IMG/VR virus record: IMGVR_UViG_3300033049_000066
Span: 229,279 to 293,278 of that record
Direction: 5' to 3' (one strand)
Length of the DNA stretch: 64,000 nt
Each line of letters begins with the position of its first letter. Position 1 is the first letter of the stretch. Of this stretch, positions 14,511 through 62,799 are shown piece after piece. The notes below the pieces were generated by a model, which had not been told where the DNA came from, did not search any database, and worked only from the letters and a program-made list of their open reading frames with translations. The position numbers and the translations under genes were made by a program.

Positions 14511-16235
14511 ATGGCAGATAAAAAGAATGCTGGTGGATGGAAGAAGTATTTTAAAGTAGCAGACACCTCAGGAACAATGAGTCCGATTAGTGGGCTTGGG
14601 AATATCAATGGGCAAGTTGGGTTTAAAAACTATCAGAGTAACTTACCAGAGGTGTACACCGGTCACCCTAATAGAATCGAACGTTACAATCAGTACGAAG
14701 CAATGGATATGGATAGCGAAGTTAACGCTTGCTTAGATATCATATCTGAATTTTCAACTCAAACAAACGAGCAGAACAATACCGCATTTGACTTCTTCTT
14801 TAATGAAACACCGACCGACAACGAAATTAACATTATTACTCAGCAACTTAATCAATGGGTGAAACTGAACGAATTTGATAAACGCATTTTTAAAATATTT
14901 CGCAATACAATTAAGTACGGCGATCAAGTTTTTATACGTGATCCAGAAACATTTAAATTATTTTGGGTTGAGACAAACAAAATTTCAAGAGTAATTGTAA
15001 ACGAAAGTGATGGTAAAAAGCCCGAGCAATACATTGTTCAAGACATAAATCCAAATTTCGAAAACTTAACAGTCGCAGCAAAAACAACAACTGATTTTCA
15101 ATCAGGTATGCCAAACCAAGGTTACACCGCGCCACAATCGTACACAATACCTGATCAACAAGGTGCGAGTACAGGTGGTCGTTTTTCAATGTCGCAGACA
15201 GAATCCGCTGTTGACGCAGAGCATATTGTACACATCAGCCTTACAGAAGGGCTAGACTACAACTGGCCTTTTGGACAATCAATACTTGAGCAAATATACA
15301 AAGTTTACAAACAAAAAGAATTACTTGAAGACGCTATTTTAATATATCGCATACAACGAGCACCGGAGCGCCGCATTTTTTATGTTGACACAGGCGATAT
15401 GCCAGCACATTTAGCAATGGGATTTGTTGAACGTATTAAGAACGAAATACACCAACGCAGAATACCAACACAGAGCGGTGGAGCAAACCAACTGGATGCG
15501 AGTTACAATCCAATTTCAATGAATGAAGATTACTTTTTCCCGCAAACCGCTGATGGACGTGGCTCGAGAGTAGAGACATTACCCGGTGGACAGAATCTGT
15601 CTGAGATCGACGACCTACGTTACTTCAACAACAAAATGGCACGTGGACTTCGAGTACCGTCAAGCTACCTACCAACTGGCCCAGATGACAGCCAAGGGAC
15701 ACTAAACGATGGACGCATGGGAACGGCACTGATCCAAGAATTCCGCTTCAATCAGTACTGCGAGAGAATACAAAATACTATCATCACGAAGCTAAACACA
15801 GAATTCAAGATGTTTTTACACTGGAGAGGCTTCAACATTGATTCCAAAATCTTCGACTTAAAATTTAACAACCCGCAAAACTTTGCTAGCTACAGACAAA
15901 CAGAGCTCGACGCCACGCGCCTTGGCAACTTCGGTGGTGTTACAGATATTCCTTACATGTCTAAGCGATTCGCCCTGAAACGCTACTTAGGGCTATCAGA
16001 AGCAGAGATGGTCGAGAACGAAAAAATGTGGCGCGAAGAAAATAACGTTCCAGATGAATCAGTTACTGGCGGCGCCGGTGATGACTTACGTGGTGTTGGT
16101 GTCACTCCTGGGGGAATGGACGCAGACTTGGGAGACCTAGATGATTTTGAAGGCGCCGACGAGCTTGACCTTGATCTCGACGGTGGCCCAGATGAAGCAG
16201 GTGCCGGAGCCGAGATAGATGTCGAAACGCCATAA
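14511..16235 (+). CDS. gp20: Portal protein
   Basis: LLEDAILIYRIQRAPERRIFYVDTG, EDYFFP and ETLPGGQNL motifs. Confidence 0.97.
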   Translation: MADKKNAGGWKKYFKVADTSGTMSPISGLGNINGQVGFKNYQSNLPEVYTGHPNRIERYNQYEAMDMDSEVNACLDIISEFSTQTNEQNNTAFDFFFNETPTDNEINIITQQLNQWVKLNEFDKRIFKIFRNTIKYGDQVFIRDPETFKLFWVETNKISRVIVNESDGKKPEQYIVQDINPNFENLTVAAKTTTDFQSGMPNQGYTAPQSYTIPDQQGASTGGRFSMSQTESAVDAEHIVHISLTEGLDYNWPFGQSILEQIYKVYKQKELLEDAILIYRIQRAPERRIFYVDTGDMPAHLAMGFVERIKNEIHQRRIPTQSGGANQLDASYNPISMNEDYFFPQTADGRGSRVETLPGGQNLSEIDDLRYFNNKMARGLRVPSSYLPTGPDDSQGTLNDGRMGTALIQEFRFNQYCERIQNTIITKLNTEFKMFLHWRGFNIDSKIFDLKFNNPQNFASYRQTELDATRLGNFGGVTDIPYMSKRFALKRYLGLSEAEMVENEKMWREENNVPDESVTGGAGDDLRGVGVTPGGMDADLGDLDDFEGADELDLDLDGGPDEAGAGAEIDVETP

Positions 16236-16485: not shown

Positions 16486-16824
16486 ATGAAATCGACTGAA
16501 TTTATAACCGAATGGAAAAAGTACGATAAAGTTGACCCACTTTTGTCACAAGCTAGAAAAATAGCAACAGGCGAAATTAATAAACTTAGTAAAGAATTTC
16601 GCCTTCGGCGCAGGTGGTCTGAATGGACTGATGACAAGGTAGCTATCCAGTTTTGGCAACGTGACAATAATTATGACCCCAAGACTGTTACACTAACTCT
16701 AGAATACCAAAAATTATTAAGAAAGCTGTGTCGCCAGTTAATAAAGTCTCCGAATATTGCAAGCGCAAAGGTAACGCCAAACGCATTACACCGTCCCGAC
16801 ATTATAGTTACAGTTTCTTACTAG
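16486..16824 (+). CDS. Putative internal head protein
   Basis: N-terminus MKSTEFITE resembles the T4 capsid-targeting sequence. Confidence 0.55.
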   Translation: MKSTEFITEWKKYDKVDPLLSQARKIATGEINKLSKEFRLRRRWSEWTDDKVAIQFWQRDNNYDPKTVTLTLEYQKLLRKLCRQLIKSPNIASAKVTPNALHRPDIIVTVSY

Positions 16825-17753: not shown

Positions 17754-18386
17754 ATGAGTATCTTACAAGAATATTTAAATTATGACGCAGCTAATGTTGA
17801 GCTTCTCACTGAAGCCAACAGCAGCGGCGGCAAAGATTTATACATGAAGGGCATCTGCATTCAAGGCGATCAAAAAAACGCCAACCAACGCATTTACCCT
17901 GCAAGAGAAATCACAACAGCCGTTAAAACACTTAACGAACAAATCAACGGTGGCTATTCTGTCTTAGGCGAAATAGACCATCCGGAAGATTTAAAGATCA
18001 ATTTAGACCGCGTGTCGCACATGATTACAGAAATGTGGATGGAAGGCGCTAACGGTTACGGTAAGTTAAAGATACTTCCAACTCCGATGGGCAAAGTTAT
18101 TGAAACAATGCTACAGTCAAAAGTTAAATTAGGCGTTTCGTCTAGGGGAAGTGGTAATGTTAACGAAGCCACAGGACACGTCAGTGAATTTGAAATAATC
18201 ACTGTAGATATCGTAGCACAGCCATCTGCTCCGGAAGCGTATCCGACAGCTATATATGAAGGCATCATGAATATGAAAGGTGGCTTGAAGTTGTTAGGTA
18301 TTGCAGAAGACGCTTGCGAGAACAAACGTGTACAAAGATATTTGAAAGAAGGCGTAATTGCGTTAATTAAAGATTTAAAGATTTAA
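17754..18386 (+). CDS. gp21: Prohead protease
   Basis: NANQRIYP, GEIDHP, GVSSRGSG, DIVAQPSAP. Confidence 0.96.
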   Translation: MSILQEYLNYDAANVELLTEANSSGGKDLYMKGICIQGDQKNANQRIYPAREITTAVKTLNEQINGGYSVLGEIDHPEDLKINLDRVSHMITEMWMEGANGYGKLKILPTPMGKVIETMLQSKVKLGVSSRGSGNVNEATGHVSEFEIITVDIVAQPSAPEAYPTAIYEGIMNMKGGLKLLGIAEDACENKRVQRYLKEGVIALIKDLKI

Positions 18387-18982
18387 TGACAGAAGCGTTT
18401 GTATATAAGTGGACACAAATATCAACTAAGAAATGGTACATTGGGTCCAGAACAGCAAAAGGTTGTTCTATGCAAGATGGGTATATTTGCTCTAGTAGAA
18501 TTGTTAAACCTTTAATTTTAGAAAATGCAGTTGAATGGAATAGAGAAATACTAGCAGTTGGCACACCAGATAATATGCGCCAGCTCGAAAGTAAAATGCT
18601 ACAGCAGCTTGATGCAAAAAATGATCCGATGAGTTTTAACGAATCAAACGCAGATGGCAAATTTAGTACCGCGGGGATTGAACCGTGGAACAAAGATAAG
18701 AAAACGGGGCACACGCCGTGGAATAAAGGACTTGCTAAAGAGCTTCAGCCAGGATACGGATTGAAGCATACTAAAGAAAATAAAGAATTATTTAGTAAAA
18801 ATCAGCAAGGAGCGAGTAATTCTATGTATGGTGCTACGCCGTGGAATAAAGGTAATACAGGTAAGAAGTGGTTTAACAACGGCTCAATTGAAAAAACTTT
18901 TATACCAGGTAACGAATTGGAAAGTTTTGTTGTAGGAAGATTGACAAAACCCAATATGAGATCGAAAGATCTTAAAATTTAG
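18386..18982 (+). mobile_element. Free-standing GIY-YIG (Seg-like) homing endonuclease
   Basis: FVY...WYIGSR...Y.CSS; PWNKG repeats; NUMOD3-like HTKE. Confidence 0.85.
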
Positions 18983-20112: not shown

Positions 20113-21306
20113 ATGTCACAAGCACTATTAGAAAACCGTTGGGGTGAGACCAAAGAAGCATTGCTTGAAGGTCTTGACGGAACGAAACGTTCATCAATGA
20201 GCGTTATCTTAGAAAATACCCGTAACCACTTAGCAGAATCTGCTTCAAGTGGCGCTACTGCCGCTGGTAACGTTGCAACATTAAACCGTGTTATTTTACC
20301 AGTTATTCGACGTGTTATGCCTACCGTTATTGCTAACGAATTAGTAGGTGTTCAACCAATGAGTGGACCTGTTTCACAGATTCACACACTTCGCGTTCGT
20401 TACGGTGAAACATTAACTGACGGTTCTGCCGCAGCTACTAACGTTGCACCAGGTGATGAAGCTTTATCACCATTCAAAATTGCTCAGGCTTACTCAGCTG
20501 GTAATGGCGCAGCATCACAAGCTAACTATACAGCAGCAGCAACAGCTGGAATGGAAGGCACAGGTGGACGTTCAATAAGCGTACAGATCCTGAAGCAGGC
20601 AGTTGAAGCTAAAACTCGTAAGTTACAAGCACGTTGGACTTTCGAATCAGCACAAGACGCACAGTCTATGCATGGCATCGACGTAGAAGCAGAAATCATG
20701 GCAGCATTAGCGCAAGAAATTACCGCTGAAATTGACCAAGAAATTCTTCTTTCTTTACGTTCACTTGCTAGCACAGAAGAAACTTACAACCAGGCAGCAG
20801 TGTCAGGTACAGCTACATTTGTAGGTGACGAACACGCGGCTCTTGCAGTATTGATCAATCGTACTGCTAATAAGATCGCTCAGCGTACACGTCGTGGTGC
20901 AGGTAACTATGCAGTTGTTTCACCAGCAGCATTAACAGTACTTCAATCAGCTACTACCTCTGCTTTTGCACGTACAACTGAAGGTACTTTTGAAGCACCT
21001 ACAAACACTAAGTTTGTTGGTACTCTTAACTCAGCAATGAAAGTTTACGTTGACAGCTATGCTGCTGACAGTTCGCCAGTACTTGTTGGTTATAAAGGTT
21101 CAAGTGAATCAGACGCACCAGCGTTCTATTGTCCTTACATACCTTTAATGAGTTCAGGTGTTGTACTTGATCCAAGTACGTTTGAACCAGTTGTTAGCTT
21201 CATGACCAGATATGGTTATGTTGAGCTTACAAATACTGCTTCATCTTTCGGCAACGCTGGAGATTATCTCGGAGAAGTGGCCATTTCTAACCTTAGCTTC
21301 CAGTAA
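20113..21306 (+). CDS. gp23: Major capsid protein
   Basis: GVQPMSGP, KTRKLQARWT.E.AQD, EIDQEI, FYCPYIPL, MTRYG. Confidence 0.97.
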   Translation: MSQALLENRWGETKEALLEGLDGTKRSSMSVILENTRNHLAESASSGATAAGNVATLNRVILPVIRRVMPTVIANELVGVQPMSGPVSQIHTLRVRYGETLTDGSAAATNVAPGDEALSPFKIAQAYSAGNGAASQANYTAAATAGMEGTGGRSISVQILKQAVEAKTRKLQARWTFESAQDAQSMHGIDVEAEIMAALAQEITAEIDQEILLSLRSLASTEETYNQAAVSGTATFVGDEHAALAVLINRTANKIAQRTRRGAGNYAVVSPAALTVLQSATTSAFARTTEGTFEAPTNTKFVGTLNSAMKVYVDSYAADSSPVLVGYKGSSESDAPAFYCPYIPLMSSGVVLDPSTFEPVVSFMTRYGYVELTNTASSFGNAGDYLGEVAISNLSFQ

Positions 21307-54767: not shown

Positions 54768-57124
54768 GAGACACAAAACTTTATAAAATCTTAGAAAATT
54801 TCGACAAGATTGATTCAGCAGCCGATAAATTGACTCCTATCACAGAAAATTACGACGAAATTCATAACATCTTAAATCGATTATCTGATTCAGGTAAGCA
54901 ATTAATTGCTCAAGGCGACGCAAACATCGATGAGTTACTAACAGGTGAGTACACCGATGTGGCTGGGATTGACATGAGAGCTGATATTCGCATATTGCGC
55001 AAAGCTTCACGTCAACTACAGCAACAAGGAAATCTTAACCGAGACCAAATATTAAATATACTTCATAATTCAATTGATGATGCGCTGACTGATGTCACCG
55101 AAACTCAAACCACCGTACAGACCATGGGTAACAAAATAAAAGTTACTACAGATGGTGATACTACAGAATACGACGACGCTGAAACTGCCAAGGCAATGAT
55201 GGGCGACGACGAATTTACAACCGAGAGCGACAATGCTGAACCATCACTTGCTTTTAACGCTGGTGCAGATGCTGCCAACGCAGGAAAAGATCTACGTGAT
55301 ATAAATGTTGCTTTCTACCCAGAAGCCGATCGCAATGATTTCATTGCTGGATACGAGAGTGTACCTACCGTAGCAGTGACAGAAGGCGGCCTAGGTGGAG
55401 ATATGTGGGATTCAGCAGCAGATGAGCTGGATCTTGCCGACTACGGCGACAACGACTTTTCAGTAAGAGATGAACCACCAGCAGAATTTGGCATCAGCGA
55501 TGATGAATGGATGATTAGTGACTTAGATGAAGAAATTGAAGCAGACTTCGATTCTGATTTAAGTTCCGGTTACCCAGGAGACAACGATGATGACGCAGAG
55601 CTAGCGACTTTTGACAGCGAAGATGAATCGCATCGTAAACGTTTGCAACGCGGCACCCCAGTTGTTTTAAGCCCGGATTTATTTGCCGACAAGAACAGCA
55701 ACAGGCGCGGTGTCTTTATAAATCGTAGCCCAAGCGGTCACTACGGTACTGTAATACGTGATTTTGATCACAAAGAAGTTAAAGTTCATCTTAGTGATAT
55801 TGTATCCGCAGATTTAGTAAACAATTCAGTCTACGAAGAATACGGGATCAACCTTGAATCTATGCTAGCTGAAGATAAAATTAAGTTTAGTGATTTAAAG
55901 GTCGGTCAGAAATTTAAGAAACCTAACAATTCTGAATTAGTGTTAACAAAAACAAAAACTAATAAATTTAAAAAGAATCTTACTAAGCCACAAGGCGGAG
56001 CGGTACATTTTAGTATTTCTCCAGACGCTGAGGTTATAGCTGAAGATATTACAATGACCCAAACAACTAACCTAGACCACCCAGAAAACGATACAACTAC
56101 AGTGACAGCAGTAGGCCAAGACGCTGGTGACGACTTAGCGGCGCTTATGACGAACGCAGGGCTAAACAGCACATCGGGATACTCCGCAGCAGTTGAACCT
56201 GAGGTAGTTGACACAGGCGAGCCACTAGAAATGCAAGGTATGCTCGACATGATGGACGCACCTGAGATGACACAAGAAGCTTACGGTGATCCAACTTACA
56301 ACGCTGACTTATTTCCAACACCCGACCCTGAGGACTTTGAACCATCAAACGCAGAATTAGATGCGATTGAAGCCGACCCAGAGATGTTTGAAGCCGAAGG
56401 GCAAGCAACATTAGCTAACATTGACCCAGCATTAGCAGCCGACATAATTGGCGGCTTGGATATAGCGCAGGTGCTAAGTCACAATTCGCACAGAGCCTCA
56501 CAGAAGGACCTCGACATACTTGAACGAGAATATTCAGATGTAGCTGCGAAATACGGCTTAGACGAGTTTTTATCTTCAGACGCAATACTTGATAGATTAG
56601 AATCTGCTATCTTTGATTTGTTTGGTGGTAACGATGCACCAGTAGTTGAAGATGCGCAGCCAGTATACTCACTTGATAGCTTGTTATCTAATTTTGATGA
56701 GAGTGAAGTTTTAGCATGGTTAGGAGATGACGGCAATCAGGCTATTGATGTTGCGCTAGTTGCTAAATACGGCACCGATAAAGAAAGTGCCGGGGACTTA
56801 TTTAATTGGTTATACAATCGTTATGGTAAAATAATTTCCGATTACGCAAAAGAGAATTTTGGAGCACACTTAGGTGAAGAACGCGATCAGGAATACACAA
56901 ACACCCCAGGTGAACTTGAAGCTGGTGTAGACGTAGTTACACATGGCTTGAGCGGTGGACTTAACCGACGTAAGAATTCTTACAAGCTAGCAGCTGGTGG
57001 TGACAATCCAATGAAGCGTCCAGTAACTGAAAACAAGTCATCGAAGATTGTAAATGAACACGAAAGTGTTGATAACTTTTTAAATATGTACAAAGTGTTT
57101 AAACATAAAGGCGAAAAGAAATAA
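54764..57124 (+). CDS. Large acidic late protein (candidate internal head polyprotein)
   Basis: 786 aa, D/E-rich, many hydrophobic-x-E sites; C-terminal GGLNR.K...GDNPM. Confidence 0.7.
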   Translation: MRDTKLYKILENFDKIDSAADKLTPITENYDEIHNILNRLSDSGKQLIAQGDANIDELLTGEYTDVAGIDMRADIRILRKASRQLQQQGNLNRDQILNILHNSIDDALTDVTETQTTVQTMGNKIKVTTDGDTTEYDDAETAKAMMGDDEFTTESDNAEPSLAFNAGADAANAGKDLRDINVAFYPEADRNDFIAGYESVPTVAVTEGGLGGDMWDSAADELDLADYGDNDFSVRDEPPAEFGISDDEWMISDLDEEIEADFDSDLSSGYPGDNDDDAELATFDSEDESHRKRLQRGTPVVLSPDLFADKNSNRRGVFINRSPSGHYGTVIRDFDHKEVKVHLSDIVSADLVNNSVYEEYGINLESMLAEDKIKFSDLKVGQKFKKPNNSELVLTKTKTNKFKKNLTKPQGGAVHFSISPDAEVIAEDITMTQTTNLDHPENDTTTVTAVGQDAGDDLAALMTNAGLNSTSGYSAAVEPEVVDTGEPLEMQGMLDMMDAPEMTQEAYGDPTYNADLFPTPDPEDFEPSNAELDAIEADPEMFEAEGQATLANIDPALAADIIGGLDIAQVLSHNSHRASQKDLDILEREYSDVAAKYGLDEFLSSDAILDRLESAIFDLFGGNDAPVVEDAQPVYSLDSLLSNFDESEVLAWLGDDGNQAIDVALVAKYGTDKESAGDLFNWLYNRYGKIISDYAKENFGAHLGEERDQEYTNTPGELEAGVDVVTHGLSGGLNRRKNSYKLAAGGDNPMKRPVTENKSSKIVNEHESVDNFLNMYKVFKHKGEKK

Positions 57125-57125
57125 G

Positions 57126-57467
57126 ATGAGAGCAGATGAGTTTGTCACAGAAACAAAGCGTGGCAAGGTACTTGACGCAGTGTCAAAAGTCAGCCCGGGC
57201 AGTTCGTTCACAGCGGATGGTGGGATTGACTTGTATCGAGCAGCACAGCTCATAGCACGATTACCGGGTGACATCGGTGACCTCGACCCGTACAGTTTCG
57301 TAACAGGCCGGCCAATGATTGTTACTTACACTAAAGAAGAACAAACGATGGTTAAAGACGCATTCAAAGCAATGGGTATTGATTATCATGAAGAACTACA
57401 CACCGGAAGCGAAGAGCCCGCCGGTGTCAATACAACGAGCCCGACACAAGGATTTAAAGGATATTAA
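57126..57467 (+). CDS. Candidate internal head protein
   Basis: N-terminus MRADEFVTE. Confidence 0.7.
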   Translation: MRADEFVTETKRGKVLDAVSKVSPGSSFTADGGIDLYRAAQLIARLPGDIGDLDPYSFVTGRPMIVTYTKEEQTMVKDAFKAMGIDYHEELHTGSEEPAGVNTTSPTQGFKGY

Positions 57468-57468
57468 A

Positions 57469-57867
57469 ATGAACGAAATAAATCAACTTAAGAACTTAGT
57501 TGAGAGCCTTAGCAATATCGGAGTGGATAATCAAGGTACAGTCGAACTGCCAAAAGATACAGTAGACCGAATACTTGAGGCTTTAGAAGCTGGAATACAC
57601 GCAATAGAGAACCAAGATAGCGATCAGCAATTTGCAGTTACCTCCATGCATTCAGCGCTAAAGCTAATAGACCCACACCACACATATAACGAGTCAGCTA
57701 GCGTAATCGAAGCAGGTACAGATTTTAACCAAGCAGCTCGTATTGAAAAAGTGCAGGGTTTAGAATTCAACCAAGCAGAAAAATTAATTTTTAATTGGGT
57801 AAAAGCCGGTGTTATAAATGTTAGGAATTTCTCAGAATTAATTAAGGCAAACAGAGACGTATTTTAA
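57469..57867 (+). CDS. Candidate internal head protein
   Basis: N-terminus MNEINQLKNLVES. Confidence 0.7.
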   Translation: MNEINQLKNLVESLSNIGVDNQGTVELPKDTVDRILEALEAGIHAIENQDSDQQFAVTSMHSALKLIDPHHTYNESASVIEAGTDFNQAARIEKVQGLEFNQAEKLIFNWVKAGVINVRNFSELIKANRDVF

Positions 57868-57952
57868 AGATAACCTCTTCGGACGCTAGGCGTTAAGGCC
57901 GCGCCCAGCGTTAACACAACGCAAGGATTTAAAGGATTTAAAGGATATTAAA

Positions 57953-58354
57953 ATGAACGAAATAAATCAACTTAAAAGTTTAATGGAATCAATAACACAA
58001 CTGTCAGAATCATCAGCTGGCAGAATGAAGAATGCTGACTTTGTCAAAATGTACCCAAATTTGCCACTAACTTGGTCTATTTTTGTAGATACCACGTCTA
58101 GAACAACTAGTACAAATGATGTAGGTGAAAGTATTGTTGATCTATCTACGTATGCTCCAGACGGTACGTATGATGTATTTTTTAATAATGCGCTAACAGA
58201 TGGCATTATCGTAAACGATGGCGTGTTTGTTATTAAACCAACGGTTGATTCAATTAAGGCAGCAGTCGACGCCGCAAGATATACTGGCAACTCCATTGAA
58301 AAATTAGAGTGGGACCCAAAGGTTAAAATCTTTCGTCTCACAATGGGATCATAG
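57953..58354 (+). CDS. Candidate internal head protein
   Basis: N-terminus MNEINQLKSLMES. Confidence 0.7.
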   Translation: MNEINQLKSLMESITQLSESSAGRMKNADFVKMYPNLPLTWSIFVDTTSRTTSTNDVGESIVDLSTYAPDGTYDVFFNNALTDGIIVNDGVFVIKPTVDSIKAAVDAARYTGNSIEKLEWDPKVKIFRLTMGS

Positions 58355-58367
58355 CAGAATTTCTGCT

Positions 58368-58484
58368 ATGGATAATTTAACCATCGCAGTTTTAGCCTGG
58401 GCCGCAGTCACCGCAACGACTGTTATTGTACTATGGTATCAATCTAGGACTCTCGTAAAATCTAAAAAAAGAATAACCTCTTAG
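58368..58484 (+). CDS. 38-aa single-TM peptide, not in the ORF track
   Basis: MDNLTIAVLAWAAVTATTVIVLWYQSRTLVKSKKRITS. Confidence 0.45.
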   Translation: MDNLTIAVLAWAAVTATTVIVLWYQSRTLVKSKKRITS

Positions 58485-58547
58485 GACGGTTAGGCGTTAC
58501 GGCCGCGGTACTGAATTCGCTACTCAATCCGCACAGTAGAGTAAAAT

Positions 58548-58573
58548 AGCAGTCCTTGGGCTGCTTTTTATTT
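58548..58573 (+). terminator. Rho-independent terminator
   Basis: AGCAGTCC-TT-GGGCTGCTTTTTATTT. Confidence 0.75.
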
Positions 58574-58605
58574 TCCATCTATTCAAAATTCGGTTAAATA
58601 CTATT

Positions 58606-60183
58606 ATGAGCAAAAATCTCGATGGCGTGCTGGTCAAACGACCGCATAGTAAAACACATTACGATGAAAATCACGTTAGATGTTTCGCACGATGCGTTAA
58701 CCCACTCACGGGCCCGTTGTATTTTCTTACAAATTTTTTCTACATTCAACATCCGATCCAAGGTAGATTAAAATACAGTCCGTATGAGTTTCAAAAAGGC
58801 TTAATCGACAGCTATGTAAATCATAGATTCAGTATCAATCTTCTTAGCAGACAAACAGGCAAGACGACGACCGCAGCAGGATATCTACTGTGGTACGCGA
58901 TGTTCAGACCCGACAGCACCATTCTTATCGCAGCGCACAAGTACAGCGGCGTACAAGAAATTATGCAGCGTATACGCTATGCGTATGAACTATGCCCGGA
59001 TCATATAAGGGCAGGTGTAACATCGTACAATAAGGGATCAATGGAGTTTGACAATGGTTCACGCATAGTCGCGCAAGCAACGACAGAAAACACCGGACGT
59101 GGTATGTCTATTACATTATTGTACTTAGACGAATTCGCATTCGTAAGGCCGAACATTGCGAAAGAATTCTGGACTTCAATCTCCCCGACACTGTCAACAG
59201 GTGGTGGGGCAATTATCACAAGCACGCCGAACAGCGATGAAGATCAATTTGCGTTACTGTGGAAGGGCGCCAACAAAACTGAGGACGCATTTGGAAATCA
59301 GACAGAACTGGGCGTCAACGGATTCAAGGCATTTTCAGCGGACTGGAAGCAACACCCGGACCGCGATGAACAGTGGGCCGATGATGAACGTGGCCGCATA
59401 GGAGATGAACGCTTCCGACGTGAGCACTTGAATGAATTCTTAATCTTTGACGAAACACTAATCGCCGCAACTACACTGATTGACATGGAGGGGATCGAAC
59501 CCATCCGCAAATCAGGGCAAGTGCGCTGGTACTCAGAGCCCAAGCCAGGGATGATATACACCGTGGCACTTGACCCAAGCCTTGGCACCGGGGGCGATCC
59601 CGCAGCTATACAGGTATTTGAAGCAAACACAACAAAGCAAGTCGCGGAGTGGAAGCATAACAAAACTCCGATACCCATGCAGATTCGTGTATTTGCAGAT
59701 ATTATCAATGAAGTTGCGGAGAAATGTAAGAATATGAATAACGTGTACTTCAGCATAGAAAACAACACAATAGGTGAGGCAGCACTCATCAGTATTGATG
59801 AGTACGGCGAGCAAAATCTTCACGGCGTATTTCTAAGCGAGCCAAGAAAAACCAGAGGCAGCCGCTCCTCACGCTCACGCAAGGGATTCAATACCACAAA
59901 CAGATCCAAGCTATCAGCATGTGCAAAAGTTAAAACACTAGTTGAGAAAAAATCAATGACAATAAGTAGCAAACCACTCATCACAGAATTTAAGCACTTT
60001 GTAGCACACGGAGCAAGTTTCGCAGCAAAACCCGGAGAGACCGACGATTTAGTGATGGCCTTACTGTTAACGGTGCGTATGTTTGCAGTTCTTAAAGACT
60101 ATCACAAGGAACTTACAAATCAATTGCGTGACTACAGCGATGATATAGTTGCACCTATGCCGTTTATATCAATGATAAGCTAA
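58606..60183 (+). CDS. gp17: Terminase large subunit
   Basis: Walker A SRQTGKT, Walker B LLYLDEFAF, ITSTP, nuclease ALDPSLG.GGD and DDLVMA. Confidence 0.97.
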   Translation: MSKNLDGVLVKRPHSKTHYDENHVRCFARCVNPLTGPLYFLTNFFYIQHPIQGRLKYSPYEFQKGLIDSYVNHRFSINLLSRQTGKTTTAAGYLLWYAMFRPDSTILIAAHKYSGVQEIMQRIRYAYELCPDHIRAGVTSYNKGSMEFDNGSRIVAQATTENTGRGMSITLLYLDEFAFVRPNIAKEFWTSISPTLSTGGGAIITSTPNSDEDQFALLWKGANKTEDAFGNQTELGVNGFKAFSADWKQHPDRDEQWADDERGRIGDERFRREHLNEFLIFDETLIAATTLIDMEGIEPIRKSGQVRWYSEPKPGMIYTVALDPSLGTGGDPAAIQVFEANTTKQVAEWKHNKTPIPMQIRVFADIINEVAEKCKNMNNVYFSIENNTIGEAALISIDEYGEQNLHGVFLSEPRKTRGSRSSRSRKGFNTTNRSKLSACAKVKTLVEKKSMTISSKPLITEFKHFVAHGASFAAKPGETDDLVMALLLTVRMFAVLKDYHKELTNQLRDYSDDIVAPMPFISMIS

Positions 60184-60246
60184 TGCGATGTTTTAATTTA
60201 CAGTCGTTTGATTTATATTAAAACTATTTCTAAGGTAAATACAACT

Positions 60247-62799
60247 ATGAATAACGTAGCAGATAAATTATACAACATACTCGGCACTAAATTTAACAAT
60301 ACAGACATTAAAACACTAAGCGCATCCGGCAAAGAAACTACCGATATGGAAGAAATTCAAATGTTTAGTTTTGATTTTCTTGTTGATTCACGTAATTACG
60401 GACCGGTCGTATTATTATTAAGCGCAACAGACAACCTTGAAGTCTACTACGGCGACAACACAAGTAAATCCCTTGATAGAGACGCGAAGAAAAAATGGGA
60501 GAACTTAATTGAACATTTGAGTACTTTTGCGCGTACAAATAGATTAGGGTTTAGTTTGAAACACACCTCAGATTTAAAATACGATTTATCAAATATCGCA
60601 GATATTACAGAAAGCTACAGGAATATTTTTGAAGGATATTACGGAACCAGGAAGACTAGCTACAGCCCACAAGGCAACGCCAAAATTATCATAAAACATA
60701 CTAAGGCAATCAGCGAAGGCGAGAAAAGGTTTCGTAATATATCTTCACTTTTTATTGAAAATGCTGACGGCGAGCGTTTTAAACTTCCATTCACTAAGCT
60801 AGCAGGCGCAAGGGCAATGGCACGTCACGTAACAGAAGGCGGCAACCCTTACGATTTATTCGGCGTTCACATCTCAGAGATGGTCAAAGATATCAACACG
60901 CTGGGCGGATTTGTTAGGCGCTCTAAGATGTACGAAGGCAACGACGACGCAATGGCAATGGTCGAAACTGGACGCTCTCACTACACTGAAATGCGTAAAG
61001 GCCTCAAGAGAATAGCAGGTGTACGTGGATACAAAACATACAAAGAAAGCTGGGAACCCTCAGCAATCACAGAACAAGATTTAGACACATCAAAAATTAG
61101 GGGCCTGTTCACTGAAAAGAAAGTTAATCAACGCACAGAAGATGCATTACCACTGCTAGCACGTCTACAACAAATGGCAGAAGCACAAAATCAATCCGAC
61201 CTTCCGAGAGATGAACTAAGCAAACACAGAGAAGATCACGGTGAAGAACCTGACACCAACGACGAAGGCGCGACTTATGAATTTCACCCATTCGACATTG
61301 AGCAACGTGATTCAGACAAATGGCATGCTGATCGTTACGCTGAATATTATGAAGAAACTAACAAACAGGACCCAAAAATGAAGCAAATGAATGAGCAGTA
61401 TGAAGAACAGCGTACAAAAATTATAGTAGACTTTCTCACAGCAGAAGGCCACCGCGGAAGTTTTAGTACGATGACACTAACTAATGTCATGGCTAAGGCA
61501 GGTTACCGCATGGAACTCAATCAACTGGAAAAATTCTTAGGGACACTAGCCGACCAAGGCATAATACGGAGCACTGGCACTTCGAGTGGTTTTGGAAGCA
61601 CACCGTCTACGACATGGAAGCTAGGTGGCGGAAGCCCTGCGCAATATGAAGAACAGCGTACAAAAATTATAGTAGATTTTCTCACAAAAGAAGGTCATCG
61701 CGGAAGTTTTAGTACATTGACACTAACTAATGTCATGACTAAGGCAGGACATCGCATGGAACTCAACCAACTGGAAAAATTCTTAGGAACACTAGCTGAT
61801 CAAAACATAATACAGAGCACTGGCACTTCAACTGGTTTTGGAAGCACGCCATCTACGACATGGAAGCTAGGTGGCGGCGGTATGAAGACGGAGGGAGAAG
61901 ATAACGTTAGCCCACCAACAGAAGAAGATAACAAAACAAAAGACTACGGAATGATAACTTGTTCAACATGCGGCGGTAGCGGCATGGTTGAACGTAGTTG
62001 GTGCCCAGAATGTGATGGATTTGGTCTAGTAACGCCTAACGCTGCCGAAGAGGCTGAAATGAAGGAAGTAACAGAATTTACACAATGGGCAGAGACCATA
62101 GTTGAAGGAACGTGGGCATTTGCTGATACCCCAGACGCACTAGCAGAGCTTAAAGAGTTTATGGCGACAGAACGACCCGTTGGAATCGATGCAATGAATG
62201 CGACCACAGCACTTTACAATATATTAGGCAATGACGAATTGTTTGATCTTTTAGCAGAGATAGCTGAAGAAAACCCAGAATCCGACGCACGTATAGCAGT
62301 TAAAACTTATATTGAAGGCGTATACAGAAATTTAGACAGCTACAATGAAAGTGATCAGTTAAATATTGTTAACATGTATAATACTATTATCGGCGAAAAG
62401 ATGTACCCGCACGAAGTTGACGAAAATTGCGCAATGGACTTAGACATTGATGATGAAACACAATTAAATGCTAGCCACAATAAAGCAATGGACGACTACA
62501 TACAAAAAGAAGACGTTGACGACGAGTATCCATCTGAGATGGCGAGAGCGAGAGCGAGAGCTAGCGCAAGAACAAGAGCTATGAGTGGTCGAGAAGATTC
62601 CGGAGCGTATTATCATGTAACAGGTGAGCCCGGGCACAAAGGAACATACGCAAACGACATGGACAAGATGTCCGATCCAACCGGCGATGACGACGAATAT
62701 GAATATGACGATATGAAGTCCGGCACAAGCAGCAAATTAGATGAGTCTACTGATTTAGTGAAGTTGATGTCTCGTACAAACTTCTTACTTAACAGATAA
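60247..62799 (+). CDS. Large late mosaic protein with tandem winged-helix-like repeats and a CxxCxGxG zinc finger
   Basis: GERFKLPF..L.GARAMARHV.EGG.PYD core; 82-aa tandem repeat; CSTCGGSG...CPECDGFG. Confidence 0.75.
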   Translation: MNNVADKLYNILGTKFNNTDIKTLSASGKETTDMEEIQMFSFDFLVDSRNYGPVVLLLSATDNLEVYYGDNTSKSLDRDAKKKWENLIEHLSTFARTNRLGFSLKHTSDLKYDLSNIADITESYRNIFEGYYGTRKTSYSPQGNAKIIIKHTKAISEGEKRFRNISSLFIENADGERFKLPFTKLAGARAMARHVTEGGNPYDLFGVHISEMVKDINTLGGFVRRSKMYEGNDDAMAMVETGRSHYTEMRKGLKRIAGVRGYKTYKESWEPSAITEQDLDTSKIRGLFTEKKVNQRTEDALPLLARLQQMAEAQNQSDLPRDELSKHREDHGEEPDTNDEGATYEFHPFDIEQRDSDKWHADRYAEYYEETNKQDPKMKQMNEQYEEQRTKIIVDFLTAEGHRGSFSTMTLTNVMAKAGYRMELNQLEKFLGTLADQGIIRSTGTSSGFGSTPSTTWKLGGGSPAQYEEQRTKIIVDFLTKEGHRGSFSTLTLTNVMTKAGHRMELNQLEKFLGTLADQNIIQSTGTSTGFGSTPSTTWKLGGGGMKTEGEDNVSPPTEEDNKTKDYGMITCSTCGGSGMVERSWCPECDGFGLVTPNAAEEAEMKEVTEFTQWAETIVEGTWAFADTPDALAELKEFMATERPVGIDAMNATTALYNILGNDELFDLLAEIAEENPESDARIAVKTYIEGVYRNLDSYNESDQLNIVNMYNTIIGEKMYPHEVDENCAMDLDIDDETQLNASHNKAMDDYIQKEDVDDEYPSEMARARARASARTRAMSGREDSGAYYHVTGEPGHKGTYANDMDKMSDPTGDDDEYEYDDMKSGTSSKLDESTDLVKLMSRTNFLLNR
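61396..61878 (+). repeat. Intragenic tandem duplication, period 246 nt
   Basis: QYEEQRTKIIVDFLT...TPSTTWKLGGG occurs twice. Confidence 0.97.

What the first reader, a model, noticed from the sequence alone, without database searches (positions are those of the whole stretch)
57420..58508. Duplicated frame with swapped payload: two MNEINQLK genes
Seen: CAAGGATTTAAAGGATATTAAAATGAACGAAATAAATCAACTTAA precedes both 57469 and 57953, and ATAACCTCTT(C/A)GGACG..TAGGCGTTA.GGCCGCG follows both (57870, 58473), but the coding bodies are unrelated. Inference: a slot with fixed flanks (RBS plus targeting peptide, and a 3' RNA element) into which different injected cargos are exchanged.
Basis: partly seen in the sequence, partly recalled or inferred. 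Interest (0 to 1): 0.6.

Follow-up and report, generated by a model that had tools for sequence, protein, structure and literature searches.

The report
Swappable capsid-cargo slot in jumbo phage
Next to the DNA-packaging gene of an uncultured marine giant phage lies a fixed "slot" in which related phages carry different small genes that share only a 12-residue start peptide, most likely a tag that loads them into the virus head as in phage T4, and the slot is closed by a previously undescribed folded RNA.

Summary
A 44-nt RBS-plus-leader block is exact at 57448 and 57932, a 34-nt 3' block recurs at 57870 and 58473, and the two proteins align only over residues 1-23.

The genome is a 293-kb seawater jumbo phage. 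It has a T4-type portal, a gp21-family prohead protease, a Gp23 capsid protein and a T4-type TerL.

Five of its genes, in two loci, begin MNEI(N/T)QLKxLxE, which ends in the T4 protease motif L-x-E. Relatives carry the same leader on at least 11 unrelated, acidic bodies at about five sites, one of them just upstream of the protease gene.

Between a conserved 113-aa gene and TerL, relatives hold A+B+TM, B+TM, B alone, another cargo, TM alone, a 7-codon remnant, or nothing. So the slot and the exchange are shown.

The B body has about 150 mostly leaderless relatives elsewhere, so the leader was grafted on.

The full 3' element (58468-58574) is a covarying four-helix RNA plus terminator. It is present whatever the cargo, and the 57870 copy is a truncated recombination scar.

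Capsid targeting, cleavage and injection are inferred, not shown. This is a new variant of the T-even internal-protein/CTS loci, plus a new RNA motif.

The parts
57126..57467 (+). Conserved 113-aa gene forming the left wall of the slot. It begins MRADEFVTE (the second, T4-CTS-like leader class). Its last codons (QGFKGY*) supply the AAGGA ribosome-binding motifs of gene A.
   Evidence: The ORF is listed. A 113-115-aa homologue lies directly left of the slot in every closer relative examined.
57448..57491 (+). 5' block, copy 1: AAGGA-N5-AAGGA, a 7-nt spacer, the ATG, and leader codons 1-7 plus two bases of codon 8. It is exact over 44 nt with copy 2.
57469..57867 (+). Gene A, 132 aa, acidic. Leader MNEINQLKNLVE | S... 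The body has no detectable relatives outside near-identical copies of this phage.
   Evidence: Calculated pI of the mature part is 4.8.
57867..57903 (+). Partial copy of the RNA element (first ~34 nt). Helix P1 is broken, and P3, P4 and the terminator are absent. It is a recombination scar.
   Evidence: It scores 16.5 bits against 99.2 for the full copy. See the alignments and the fold.
57904..57952 (+). Decayed copy of the 3' end of a 113-aa gene, with a ~9-nt deletion and a 9-nt AAGGATTTA duplication. It is followed by the intact RBS of gene B, and it joins the element fragment at a short GCC(C)GC microhomology.
   Evidence: Alignment with the 113-aa gene ends of the window and of relatives.
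57953..58354 (+). Gene B, 133 aa, acidic. Leader MNEINQLKSLME | S... The body belongs to a widespread family of mostly leaderless ~100-aa proteins that end in IGS.
58368..58484 (+). 38-aa transmembrane ORF, with homologues in L016 and L125. Its stop codon lies inside the RNA element.
   Evidence: Read from the sequence. Homologues appear.
58468..58547 (+). Structured RNA element. P1 is 58475-58478 paired with 58488-58491 (loop holds CUUAGGAC). P2 is 58493-58495 with 58502-58504 (loop GUUACG). P3 is 58505-58508 with 58529-58532, and it encloses P4, 58512-58514 with 58524-58526 (loop AUUCGCUAC). An invariant AGUAA follows.
   Evidence: The single-sequence MFE gives the same helices. RNAalifold supports them. 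Covariation counts give 95.8% of cells paired, 14 pairs with compensatory changes, 0 of 500 shuffles as good, and slid controls at 33-48%. There is no Rfam match.
58548..58574 (+). Intrinsic terminator: a 7-bp GC-rich hairpin plus a T-run, ending the transcription unit that holds the slot.
   Evidence: It covaries in relatives (helix 5).
58595..58600 (+). TAAATA motif 5 nt before the TerL start codon, conserved down to ~55% TerL identity. It is a candidate T4-style late promoter.
   Evidence: The function is inferred only.
58606..60183 (+). Large terminase, T4 type; the right-hand neighbour of the slot.
   Evidence: Pfam Terminase_6N at 1e-18. It is 53% identical to PA5oct TerL.
17754..18386 (+). 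Prohead protease of the T4 gp21 family (Peptidase_S77), the enzyme expected to cut after L-x-E.
   Evidence: PF03420 at 4e-24. It is 34% identical to T4 gp21 at E=4e-20.
20113..21306 (+). Major capsid protein (Gp23 family). Its N-terminal extension ends in HLAE|SASS just before the conserved mature part.
   Evidence: PF07068 at 1.6e-97. Alignment with T4 gp23 and the PA5oct MCP.
16486..16824 (+). 112-aa gene beginning MKSTEFITE (second leader class). It sits between the portal-adjacent 79-aa gene and the acidic core-like protein, upstream of the protease. Relatives hold MKELDQLK-leader genes at this same site.

Best explanation
The region 57448-58574 is a hot-spot for cargo genes of a T4-like head.

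Shown:
- The slot lies between a conserved 113-aa gene and a conserved structured RNA plus terminator, just upstream of TerL.
- Relatives carry two, one or no genes there, and the bodies differ.
- Every cargo gene begins with the same ~12-19-residue leader, M-[KN]-E-[ILV]-x-Q-L-[KR]-x-L-x-E-[SAG]. The leader is conserved at the amino-acid level on at least 11 unrelated, acidic bodies.
- The window phage holds two cargos because an unequal crossover joined nt ~34 of the RNA element downstream of gene A to the last ~45 nt of a 113-aa gene upstream of gene B. The join is at a short microhomology, which stacked two cassettes.

Inferred:
- The leader is a capsid-targeting propeptide that binds the scaffolding core during prohead assembly.
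- The gp21-family protease removes it after L-x-E (after E12, with a second possible site near residue 19).
- The mature acidic proteins stay in the head and enter the host with the DNA, where they probably counter host defences.
- New cargos arise by recombination within the shared RBS/leader on the left and the conserved RNA element on the right. This can also graft the leader onto genes that are leaderless elsewhere, as with B.
- The RNA element itself is a 3'-UTR structure or 3'-derived small RNA of the upstream late transcript. Its function is unknown.
For: 1. T4-type head machinery is present. The genome has Portal_T4, Peptidase_S77 protease (34% identity to T4 gp21), a Gp23 capsid protein and a T4-type TerL.

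2. The protease specificity fits. The capsid protein propeptide ends in LAE|S here and LVE|N in PA5oct, immediately before the conserved mature N-terminus, near T4's LTE|A.

3. Five genes in two loci of this genome share the leader but nothing else. This mirrors T4, where Ip1-3 lie in two loci and share only the leader (PMC12373910; PMC3012670).

4. In relatives, 16 leader proteins fall into 11 BLASTP-unrelated body families.

5. Leader residues Q6, L7, K8, L10, E12 and S13 are kept through synonymous codon changes: CTT/TTA/CTA/CTC, GAG/GAA, AGC/TCA/TCC/TCG. Selection therefore acts on the peptide.

6. One leader site lies inside the head-morphogenesis operon, between the portal-adjacent gene and the core protein just upstream of the protease (L096, L100, L102).

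7. The slot states, in a series of relatives with TerL 75-85% identical:
- A+B+TM: the window.
- B+TM: L125.
- B alone: L013, L018, L091.
- Another 111-aa cargo: L015.
- TM ORF alone: L016.
- A 7-codon remnant (MNETCEE*): L019.
- Empty, with the stop of the 113-aa gene abutting the element: L110, L113, L017.

8. The B body has 154 relatives at E<=0.001. They are mostly ~100-aa proteins that lack the leader. One lies among small ORFs of a T4-like phage contig.

9. B is only 34-42% identical between phages whose TerL is 75-85% identical, so the cargo evolves fast.

10. A second leader class, M[RK]xxEF[IV]xE, resembles the T4 CTS MKTYQEFIAE. It sits on six further unrelated proteins. In the window genome one of these occupies the very site that holds the first-class leader in relatives.

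11. The RNA element is supported.
Against: - There are no virion proteomics, N-terminal sequences or transcript data. Only seawater DNA runs hold the phage.
- The cargos are acidic (pI 4.1-4.8 for 15 of 16), whereas T4 IPs are highly basic (PMC8442874).
- The MNEINQLK leader has no sequence similarity to the T4 CTS.
- The nearest cultured relative, PA5oct, which has a virion proteome, has neither leader class in the 150 kb examined, and nothing lies between gp281 and TerL.
- Single-sequence structure models of A and B were unusable (pLDDT ~41).
- The protease-leader complex prediction gave no answer.
- Gene A is known only from this phage, so its exchange is inferred from its absence in L125-type relatives.
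Confidence: 0.65

Rival explanations
1. This is an ordinary tandem gene duplication. A and B are paralogues whose bodies diverged beyond recognition while the ends stayed similar.
For: The two units are adjacent, of almost equal length (132 and 133 aa), and share both ends.
Against: - The 44-nt 5' block is 100% identical while the bodies show no similarity at all. Uniform divergence cannot give that pattern.
- B has a large family of its own, in which A is not found.
- L125 has B without A.
- The junction contains a piece of the 113-aa gene and only a fragment of the RNA element. That marks a crossover between two differently loaded slots.
- The same leader sits on 11 unrelated families.
Confidence: 0.06
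2. The shared block acts at the RNA level. It would be a translation-initiation or operator sequence bound by a regulator, for instance through the AAGGA repeats, and the encoded peptide would be incidental.
For: - Within this genome the leader is almost invariant at the nucleotide level, including third positions.
- The 5' block has two or three AAGGA motifs about 10 nt apart.
Against: - Across relatives the peptide is conserved while codons change synonymously.
- In locus 2 the leader genes have entirely different upstream sequences, with overlapping stop/start codons, yet keep the peptide.
- The peptide ends in the protease motif.
Confidence: 0.07
3. The leader is a protein signal of another kind. 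It could be an amphipathic helix for oligomerisation, for membrane or nucleoid localisation, or for docking to a non-capsid structure. The proteins would then not be packaged.
For: - The leader is predicted helical (residues 2-15 in both low-confidence models).
- The cargos are acidic, unlike T4 IPs.
- There is no proteomic evidence.
Against: - The leader ends in L-x-E followed by S/A/G, as at the capsid-protein maturation site.
- All loci lie in the virion-gene region on the late-gene strand, and one lies within the portal-protease operon.
- A T4-CTS-like leader class is interchangeable with it at the same site.
Confidence: 0.15
4. The 3' element is a site-specific recombination site carried by each cassette, like an integron attC, and a recombinase moves the cassettes.
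For: - A structured, covarying element lies at the 3' end of the slot, with a partial copy after gene A.
- The T-even IP loci and PeSL cassettes have been compared with integrons (PMC2839356).
Against: - There is only one full copy per genome.
- It is present when the slot is empty.
- It is absent from locus 2 and from the other leader sites.
- The second copy is truncated and joined by microhomology to a gene fragment.
- No Pfam or PHROG match to a recombinase appeared in the nine ORFs around the slot that were scanned.
- It lies on the sense strand directly before a terminator, as expected of an RNA.
Confidence: 0.04

Closest known systems
Internal-protein (IP) loci of T-even phages with the capsid targeting sequence (CTS) (Repoila et al. 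1994 as cited in PMC3012670, PMC2839356 and PMC12373910; Mullaney & Black 1996 as cited in PMC9026906)
   Same: - Unrelated small proteins share only a ~10-19-residue N-terminal leader that ends in the gp21 motif (L/I)-x-E.
- The phage has gp21-family protease, gp20, gp23 and gp17 homologues.
- The genes sit in two or more small hyperplastic loci.
- Conserved flanking sequences, including stem-loops, bound the variable ORFs.
- Content differs between close relatives.
   Different: - The leader sequence (MNEINQLKxLxE) is unrelated to MKTYQEFIAE.
- The cargos are acidic, not basic.
- The hosts are marine and the phage is a ~300-kb relative of PA5oct, far outside Straboviridae (TerL is about 53% identical to PA5oct).
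- At least five insertion sites exist across the clade.
- The right flank is a complex covarying four-helix RNA, not a simple AT-rich stem-loop.
- Packaging and injection are untested.
PeSL (promoter-early stem-loop) cassettes of RB49/phi1-type phages (PMC2839356)
   Same: - Conserved intergenic blocks flank ORFans and act as homology patches for insertion, deletion and replacement.
- Empty sites consist of a single fused block.
   Different: - No sigma-70-like promoter was found above chance in the flanks.
- The left homology patch includes coding sequence, namely the leader.
- The genes are in the late or virion region rather than the early hyperplastic regions.
Propeptide-bearing inner-body and ejection proteins of phiKZ, 201phi2-1 and SPN3US (PMC9026906, PMC5694885)
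   Same: These are giant phages with gp21-related proteases that cut many head proteins after a Glu, removing N-terminal propeptides from proteins packed inside the head.
   Different: - According to the T4 head-assembly review, the sites in those phages show extremely few determinants other than the glutamyl residue (PMC9026906); here the motif is L-x-E.
- No short, near-identical, portable leader has been described on unrelated small cargos in those phages.
- The phage here is T4/PA5oct-like, not chimallivirus-like.
3'-UTR structured elements and 3'-derived small RNAs ending at intrinsic terminators
   Same: A conserved, covarying multi-helix RNA lies immediately upstream of a Rho-independent terminator, at the end of a coding transcription unit.
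   Different: - No Rfam family matches at E<=1.
- The loops (CUUAGGAC, GUUACG, AUUCGCUAC, AGUAA) are invariant, which suggests a specific ligand or partner that is unknown.
- No expression data exist.

Membership tests
T4-type CTS-bearing internal (capsid-packaged, injected) proteins | A short N-terminal leader is shared by otherwise unrelated proteins of one phage. | tested here: met
   Five genes in this genome share the leader, and their bodies are unrelated. With relatives, 16 proteins fall into 11 body families.
T4-type CTS-bearing internal (capsid-packaged, injected) proteins | The leader ends in the prohead-protease cleavage motif (L/I)-x-E. | tested here: met
   LVE, LME, LSE, LFE, LTE or LKE occupies residues 10-12 in all 16 proteins, followed by S, A or G.
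T4-type CTS-bearing internal (capsid-packaged, injected) proteins | The phage encodes a gp21-family prohead protease with a T4-type portal and capsid protein. | tested here: met
   PF03420 at 4e-24, PF07068 at 1.6e-97, PF07230 at 7e-102, and BLASTP to T4 gp21 at E=4e-20.
T4-type CTS-bearing internal (capsid-packaged, injected) proteins | The loci are hypervariable among relatives while their flanks are conserved. | tested here: met
   Seven different slot states lie between the same 113-aa gene and the same RNA element.
T4-type CTS-bearing internal (capsid-packaged, injected) proteins | The leader is homologous to the T4 CTS MKTYQEFIAE. | tested here: not met
   MNEINQLKxLxE shows no similarity. 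A second class in the same genome, M[RK]xxEF[IV]xE, does resemble it, but that class is not on genes A or B.
T4-type CTS-bearing internal (capsid-packaged, injected) proteins | The mature proteins are highly basic. | tested here: not met
   Calculated pI is 4.1-4.8 for 15 of 16 and 6.6 for one. T4 IPs are described as highly basic.
T4-type CTS-bearing internal (capsid-packaged, injected) proteins | The proteins are present in the head, cleaved after the leader, and injected with the DNA. | not testable with these tools
   No isolate, proteome or RNA run is available. The complex prediction gave no answer.
PeSL regulatory cassettes | A strong sigma-70-like early promoter plus a stem-loop lies in each flank. 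| tested here: not met
   Promoter-like sites numbered 6 against 4.7 expected in 56800-58800, and none lies in the conserved blocks except a weak 9/12 match.
Integron-like cassettes (attC) | Each cassette carries its own structured recombination site, and an integrase is present. | tested here: not met
   There is one full element per genome. Empty slots keep it. Other leader loci lack it. An integrase was not searched for genome-wide.
Any Rfam RNA family | A covariance-model match. | tested here: not met
   There were no matches at E<=1 in 57000-58700 on either strand, and ARAGORN found nothing.

The most novel reading that the evidence does not exclude
A clade of marine jumbo phages has evolved its own portable capsid-loading tag, alongside an older T4-like one. 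It uses the tag to pre-package a fast-turning arsenal of small acidic proteins, possibly DNA mimics or other anti-defence factors. Some of these were recruited from genes that other phages express without a leader. The slot is bounded by a new class of structured RNA with invariant loops, and that RNA has a specific function of its own, such as a regulatory small RNA or a protein- or ligand-binding 3' element.
Probability: 0.3. Interest if true: 0.75.

Novelty: new variant of a known kind. Interest (0 to 1): 0.62.

Why it matters
- The leader-plus-slot logic of the T-even internal proteins would extend far beyond coliphages, into uncultured marine giant phages.
- It gives a simple sequence rule (M[KN]E[ILV]xQL[KR]xLxE at the N-terminus) for finding proteins that are probably delivered with the DNA. 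Such proteins are prime candidates for new anti-defence factors.
- The B family is a natural example of one effector used both with and without the tag.
- The short leader could serve as a packaging tag for engineering such phages.
- The covarying RNA upstream of TerL is a new RNA motif that can be tested directly.

Tried and rejected
- **Family scans.** Pfam and PHROG scans of A, B, the 113-aa protein, the TM ORF and the 786-aa protein found nothing.
- **Word-index protein search.** For A and B it found only self or near-identical copies. It missed the B family that the exhaustive profile search later found.
- **Structure prediction.** Single-sequence AlphaFold2 of A and B gave pLDDT 41 and 42, so the models were not used for fold search.
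- **ESM Atlas look-alikes of A.** No usable hit.
- **Complex prediction.** Protease plus A residues 1-45 scored 0.01, which is no answer and not evidence either way.
- **Known RNAs.** Rfam and ARAGORN found nothing on the element.
- **PA5oct.** Its syntenic regions and 150 kb of its genome contain neither leader class. No homologue of A, B or the 113-aa gene was found there.
- **Metagenome scan for the element.** Only two contigs came back, both already known.
- **Public runs.** Only seawater DNA contigs were laid. They showed no structural variants, only assembly breaks at the repeats. The stretch laid was 2,501 letters.
- **Repoila et al. 1994.** The paper could not be read. Its content is cited through later papers.
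- **Alternative readings considered and rejected.** The 57870 copy as a functional terminator or RNA: it lacks P1 pairing, P3, P4 and the T-run. The element as a TerL 5' leader: in L015 a radical-SAM gene separates it from TerL, yet it stays attached to the slot.
Full report
**Observation**

- A 56-nt direct repeat lies at 57448-57503 and 57932-57987 (91% identical). Its first 44 nt are exact: AAGGA motifs, a spacer, the ATG, and codons 1-7 plus two bases of codon 8.
- The 24-nt core occurs twice in the window, against none in 100 shuffles, and twice in the whole genome.
- The two 3' blocks recur at 57870/57887 and 58473/58491. Exact copies are found nowhere else in the genome.
- The products of 57469-57867 (A, 132 aa) and 57953-58354 (B, 133 aa) align only over residues 1-23.
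- A 38-aa transmembrane ORF (58368-58484) lies between B and the second 3' block.

**Context**

The window is the last 64 kb of a 293,278-bp single-contig virus record with 41.6% G+C, and it is held by seawater metagenomes.
- TerL (58606-60183) is T4-type. It is 53% identical to that of Pseudomonas jumbo phage PA5oct.
- The window also encodes a T4 gp20 portal, a gp21-family prohead protease (34% identical to T4 gp21) and a Gp23 capsid protein.
- The capsid protein's N-terminal extension ends in LAE|S just before the conserved mature region. PA5oct has LVE|N and T4 has LTE|A in the corresponding region.

**The leader is a family trait**

- Three more genes, at genome positions 22670, 23032 and 23616, start MNEI(N/T)QLKKLME. 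They sit at the end of a block of virion genes, just before an exonuclease gene.
- Pattern scans of IMG/VR found relatives with M[KN]E[ILV]xQL[KR]xLxE[SAG].
- After removing chance matches, 16 distinct proteins fall into 11 families with no BLASTP similarity beyond residue 20. Of these, 15 have a calculated pI of 4.1-4.8. Only 31% of all ORFs of at least 100 aa in the genome are below pI 5.
- Conserved leader residues are encoded by different synonymous codons in different phages. The constraint is therefore on the peptide, not the RNA.
- Leader genes occupy about five sites:
  1. the slot studied here;
  2. just left of the 113-aa gene (L091);
  3. before the exonuclease gene (locus 2 of this genome);
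  4. after the exonuclease gene;
  5. between the portal-adjacent small gene and the acidic core-like protein directly upstream of the protease.

**A second leader class**

Six further unrelated proteins of this genome begin M[RK]xxEF[IV]xE. This resembles the T4 CTS MKTYQEFIAE.
- One is the 113-aa gene that forms the left wall of the slot.
- Another (16486-16824) occupies the protease-proximal site, which in relatives holds a first-class leader gene.

The two leaders therefore look functionally interchangeable.

**The slot varies while its walls stay**

TerL-anchored loci give a graded series of relatives. All keep the 113-aa gene on the left and the 3' element plus terminator on the right.

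| Slot content | Where |
|---|---|
| A + B + TM ORF | window |
| B + TM ORF | L125 |
| B homologue only | L013/L014, L018, L091 |
| An unrelated 111-aa leader gene | L015 |
| TM ORF only | L016 |
| 7-codon remnant that starts with the leader's first three codons | L019 |
| Nothing (stop codon of the 113-aa gene abuts the element) | L110, L113; L017 with a truncated element |

PA5oct has no such region.

**Origin of cargo B**

A profile of the B family found 154 representative proteins at E<=0.001.
- They are mostly ~100-aa proteins that match only the body and lack the leader. A few are fused to Macro domains.
- One leaderless member lies among small ORFs in a T4-like phage contig.
- B is 34-42% identical between phages whose TerL is 75-85% identical.

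So a pre-existing, fast-evolving small gene acquired the leader in this clade. Gene A has no relatives anywhere.

**The 3' element**

The full copy at 58468-58574 is conserved in nine distinct relatives. It is 79-85% identical at the nucleotide level, at least as conserved as TerL DNA at 74-80%.
- The single-sequence fold, RNAalifold and pair counts on a model-guided alignment agree on four helices plus a terminator.
- The counts are 95.8% of cells paired, 14 pairs with compensatory changes, 0 of 500 shuffles as good, and 33-48% paired when the partners are slid. The alignment was fitted to the model, so the percentage paired leans towards the structure. However, P2, P3, P4 and the terminator were also predicted on the plain MAFFT alignment, and the P1 compensations (CC/GG, CG/CG, CAG/CUG, CCG/CGG) are visible in the raw sequences.
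- The loops CUUAGGAC, GUUACG and AUUCGCUAC, and a downstream AGUAA, are invariant.
- It matches no Rfam family and is single-copy in the genome.
- In L015 a radical-SAM/SPASM gene lies between the element and TerL. The element therefore belongs to the 3' end of the upstream unit, not to the TerL leader.

Its function is unknown. I rate a 3'-UTR stability or regulatory element, or a 3'-derived small RNA, as most likely.

**How two cargos came to stand in tandem**

The junction at 57867-57952 consists of three parts:
1. the first ~34 nt of the element, with P1 complementarity lost and scoring 16.5 bits against 99.2 for the full copy;
2. a decayed copy of the last ~45 nt of a 113-aa gene, with a ~9-nt deletion and a 9-nt duplication of AAGGATTTA, joined to the element fragment at a short GCC(C)GC microhomology;
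3. the intact RBS and leader of gene B.

This is the footprint of an unequal crossover between two genomes, or sister copies, whose slots were loaded differently. Relative to L125-type phages it adds A in front of B. Assembly unitigs of the source runs break at the 44-nt repeat with doubled depth and show no variant lacking A.

**Comparison with what is known**

This is the architecture described for the T-even internal-protein loci:
- two small hypervariable loci;
- more than 30 IP variants;
- a shared N-terminal capsid targeting sequence cleaved by gp21;
- conserved flanks with stem-loops thought to mediate shuffling;
- functions as injected inhibitors of Type IV restriction enzymes (PMC3012670, PMC9026906, PMC2839356, PMC12373910).

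The differences are a different leader sequence, acidic cargos, more sites, a complex covarying RNA as the right flank, and a distant marine jumbo-phage lineage. I therefore file it as working like a T4 CTS/IP system and as a new variant of that kind. I do not file it as a member by homology, because leader homology and basic charge were tested and not met.

**What is shown and what is inferred**

| Status | Claims |
|---|---|
| Shown | the repeats; the unrelated bodies; the leader family and its protein-level conservation; the variable slot with empty and remnant states; the leaderless relatives of B; the RNA structure; the scar at the A/B junction |
| Inferred | binding of the leader to the prohead core; cleavage after E12; retention in the head; injection; anti-defence function |

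Overall confidence in the capsid-cargo reading is 0.65.

**Housekeeping**

All translations used table 11. 

Noticed in passing
window 16486-16824 and 57126-57467; genome G000 positions 15390, 96194, 127837, 131095: Six otherwise unrelated proteins begin M[RK]xxEF[IV]xE. This second shared leader resembles the T4 capsid targeting sequence MKTYQEFIAE. About 0.002 such N-termini would be expected by chance among ~600 candidate starts.
   Followed up: partly
window 58595-58600 and the equivalent position in L013-L039: TAAATA(C) lies 5-6 nt before the TerL start codon and is conserved down to ~55% TerL identity, often directly after a terminator T-run. It looks like a T4-style late promoter, or else a translation signal.
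   Followed up: no
window 60208-62799: The 863-aa virion-like protein contains a tandem ~86-residue repeat (QYEEQRTKIIVDFLT...WKLGGG). A near-identical contig (L003) has one copy fewer, giving 777 aa.
   Followed up: no
L003 4429-4803 versus window 57953-58354: A population variant of gene B ends 9 residues earlier (124 aa). In run X2 the contigs break at 58293-58319, consistent with this variant.
   Followed up: partly
proteins P0015 and P0017 (relatives of the gene B body): Some members of the B-body family are C-terminal fusions to a Macro (ADP-ribose-binding or -hydrolysing) domain. This hints at a link to ADP-ribosylation-based conflicts.
   Followed up: partly
L015 4949-5959 and L017 4878-6008: A radical-SAM/SPASM gene is inserted between the slot's terminator and TerL in two relatives. 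It is absent from the window phage.
   Followed up: partly
L019 1851-5106 and L025 731-4076: An extra ORF resembling the TerL N-terminus precedes TerL, and TerL itself is lengthened (856 aa in L025). This may be a split or intein- or endonuclease-invaded terminase.
   Followed up: no
window 18386-18982: A 198-aa ORF with repeated 'PWNKG' motifs sits between the protease and scaffold-like genes, where PA5oct has nothing. It may be a homing-endonuclease-like insertion, but it has no Pfam match.
   Followed up: partly
genome G000 positions 132226, 169096, 183244, 183690, 184385, 185218 (outside the window): A multi-copy gene family begins MNTAQ(D/N)TF(N/D)RLKYDI. Whether the members share only the N-terminus or are full-length paralogues was not examined.
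   Followed up: no
L010 2875-8178 (PA5oct gp254-gp245): In PA5oct, several of the small virion proteins detected by mass spectrometry in the region syntenic with locus 2 have [IL]-x-E at residues 7-12 (gp246 ...ILVE, gp247 ...KITE, gp248 ...KILE). This suggests short cleavable N-terminal peptides there too, though without a shared leader.
   Followed up: no
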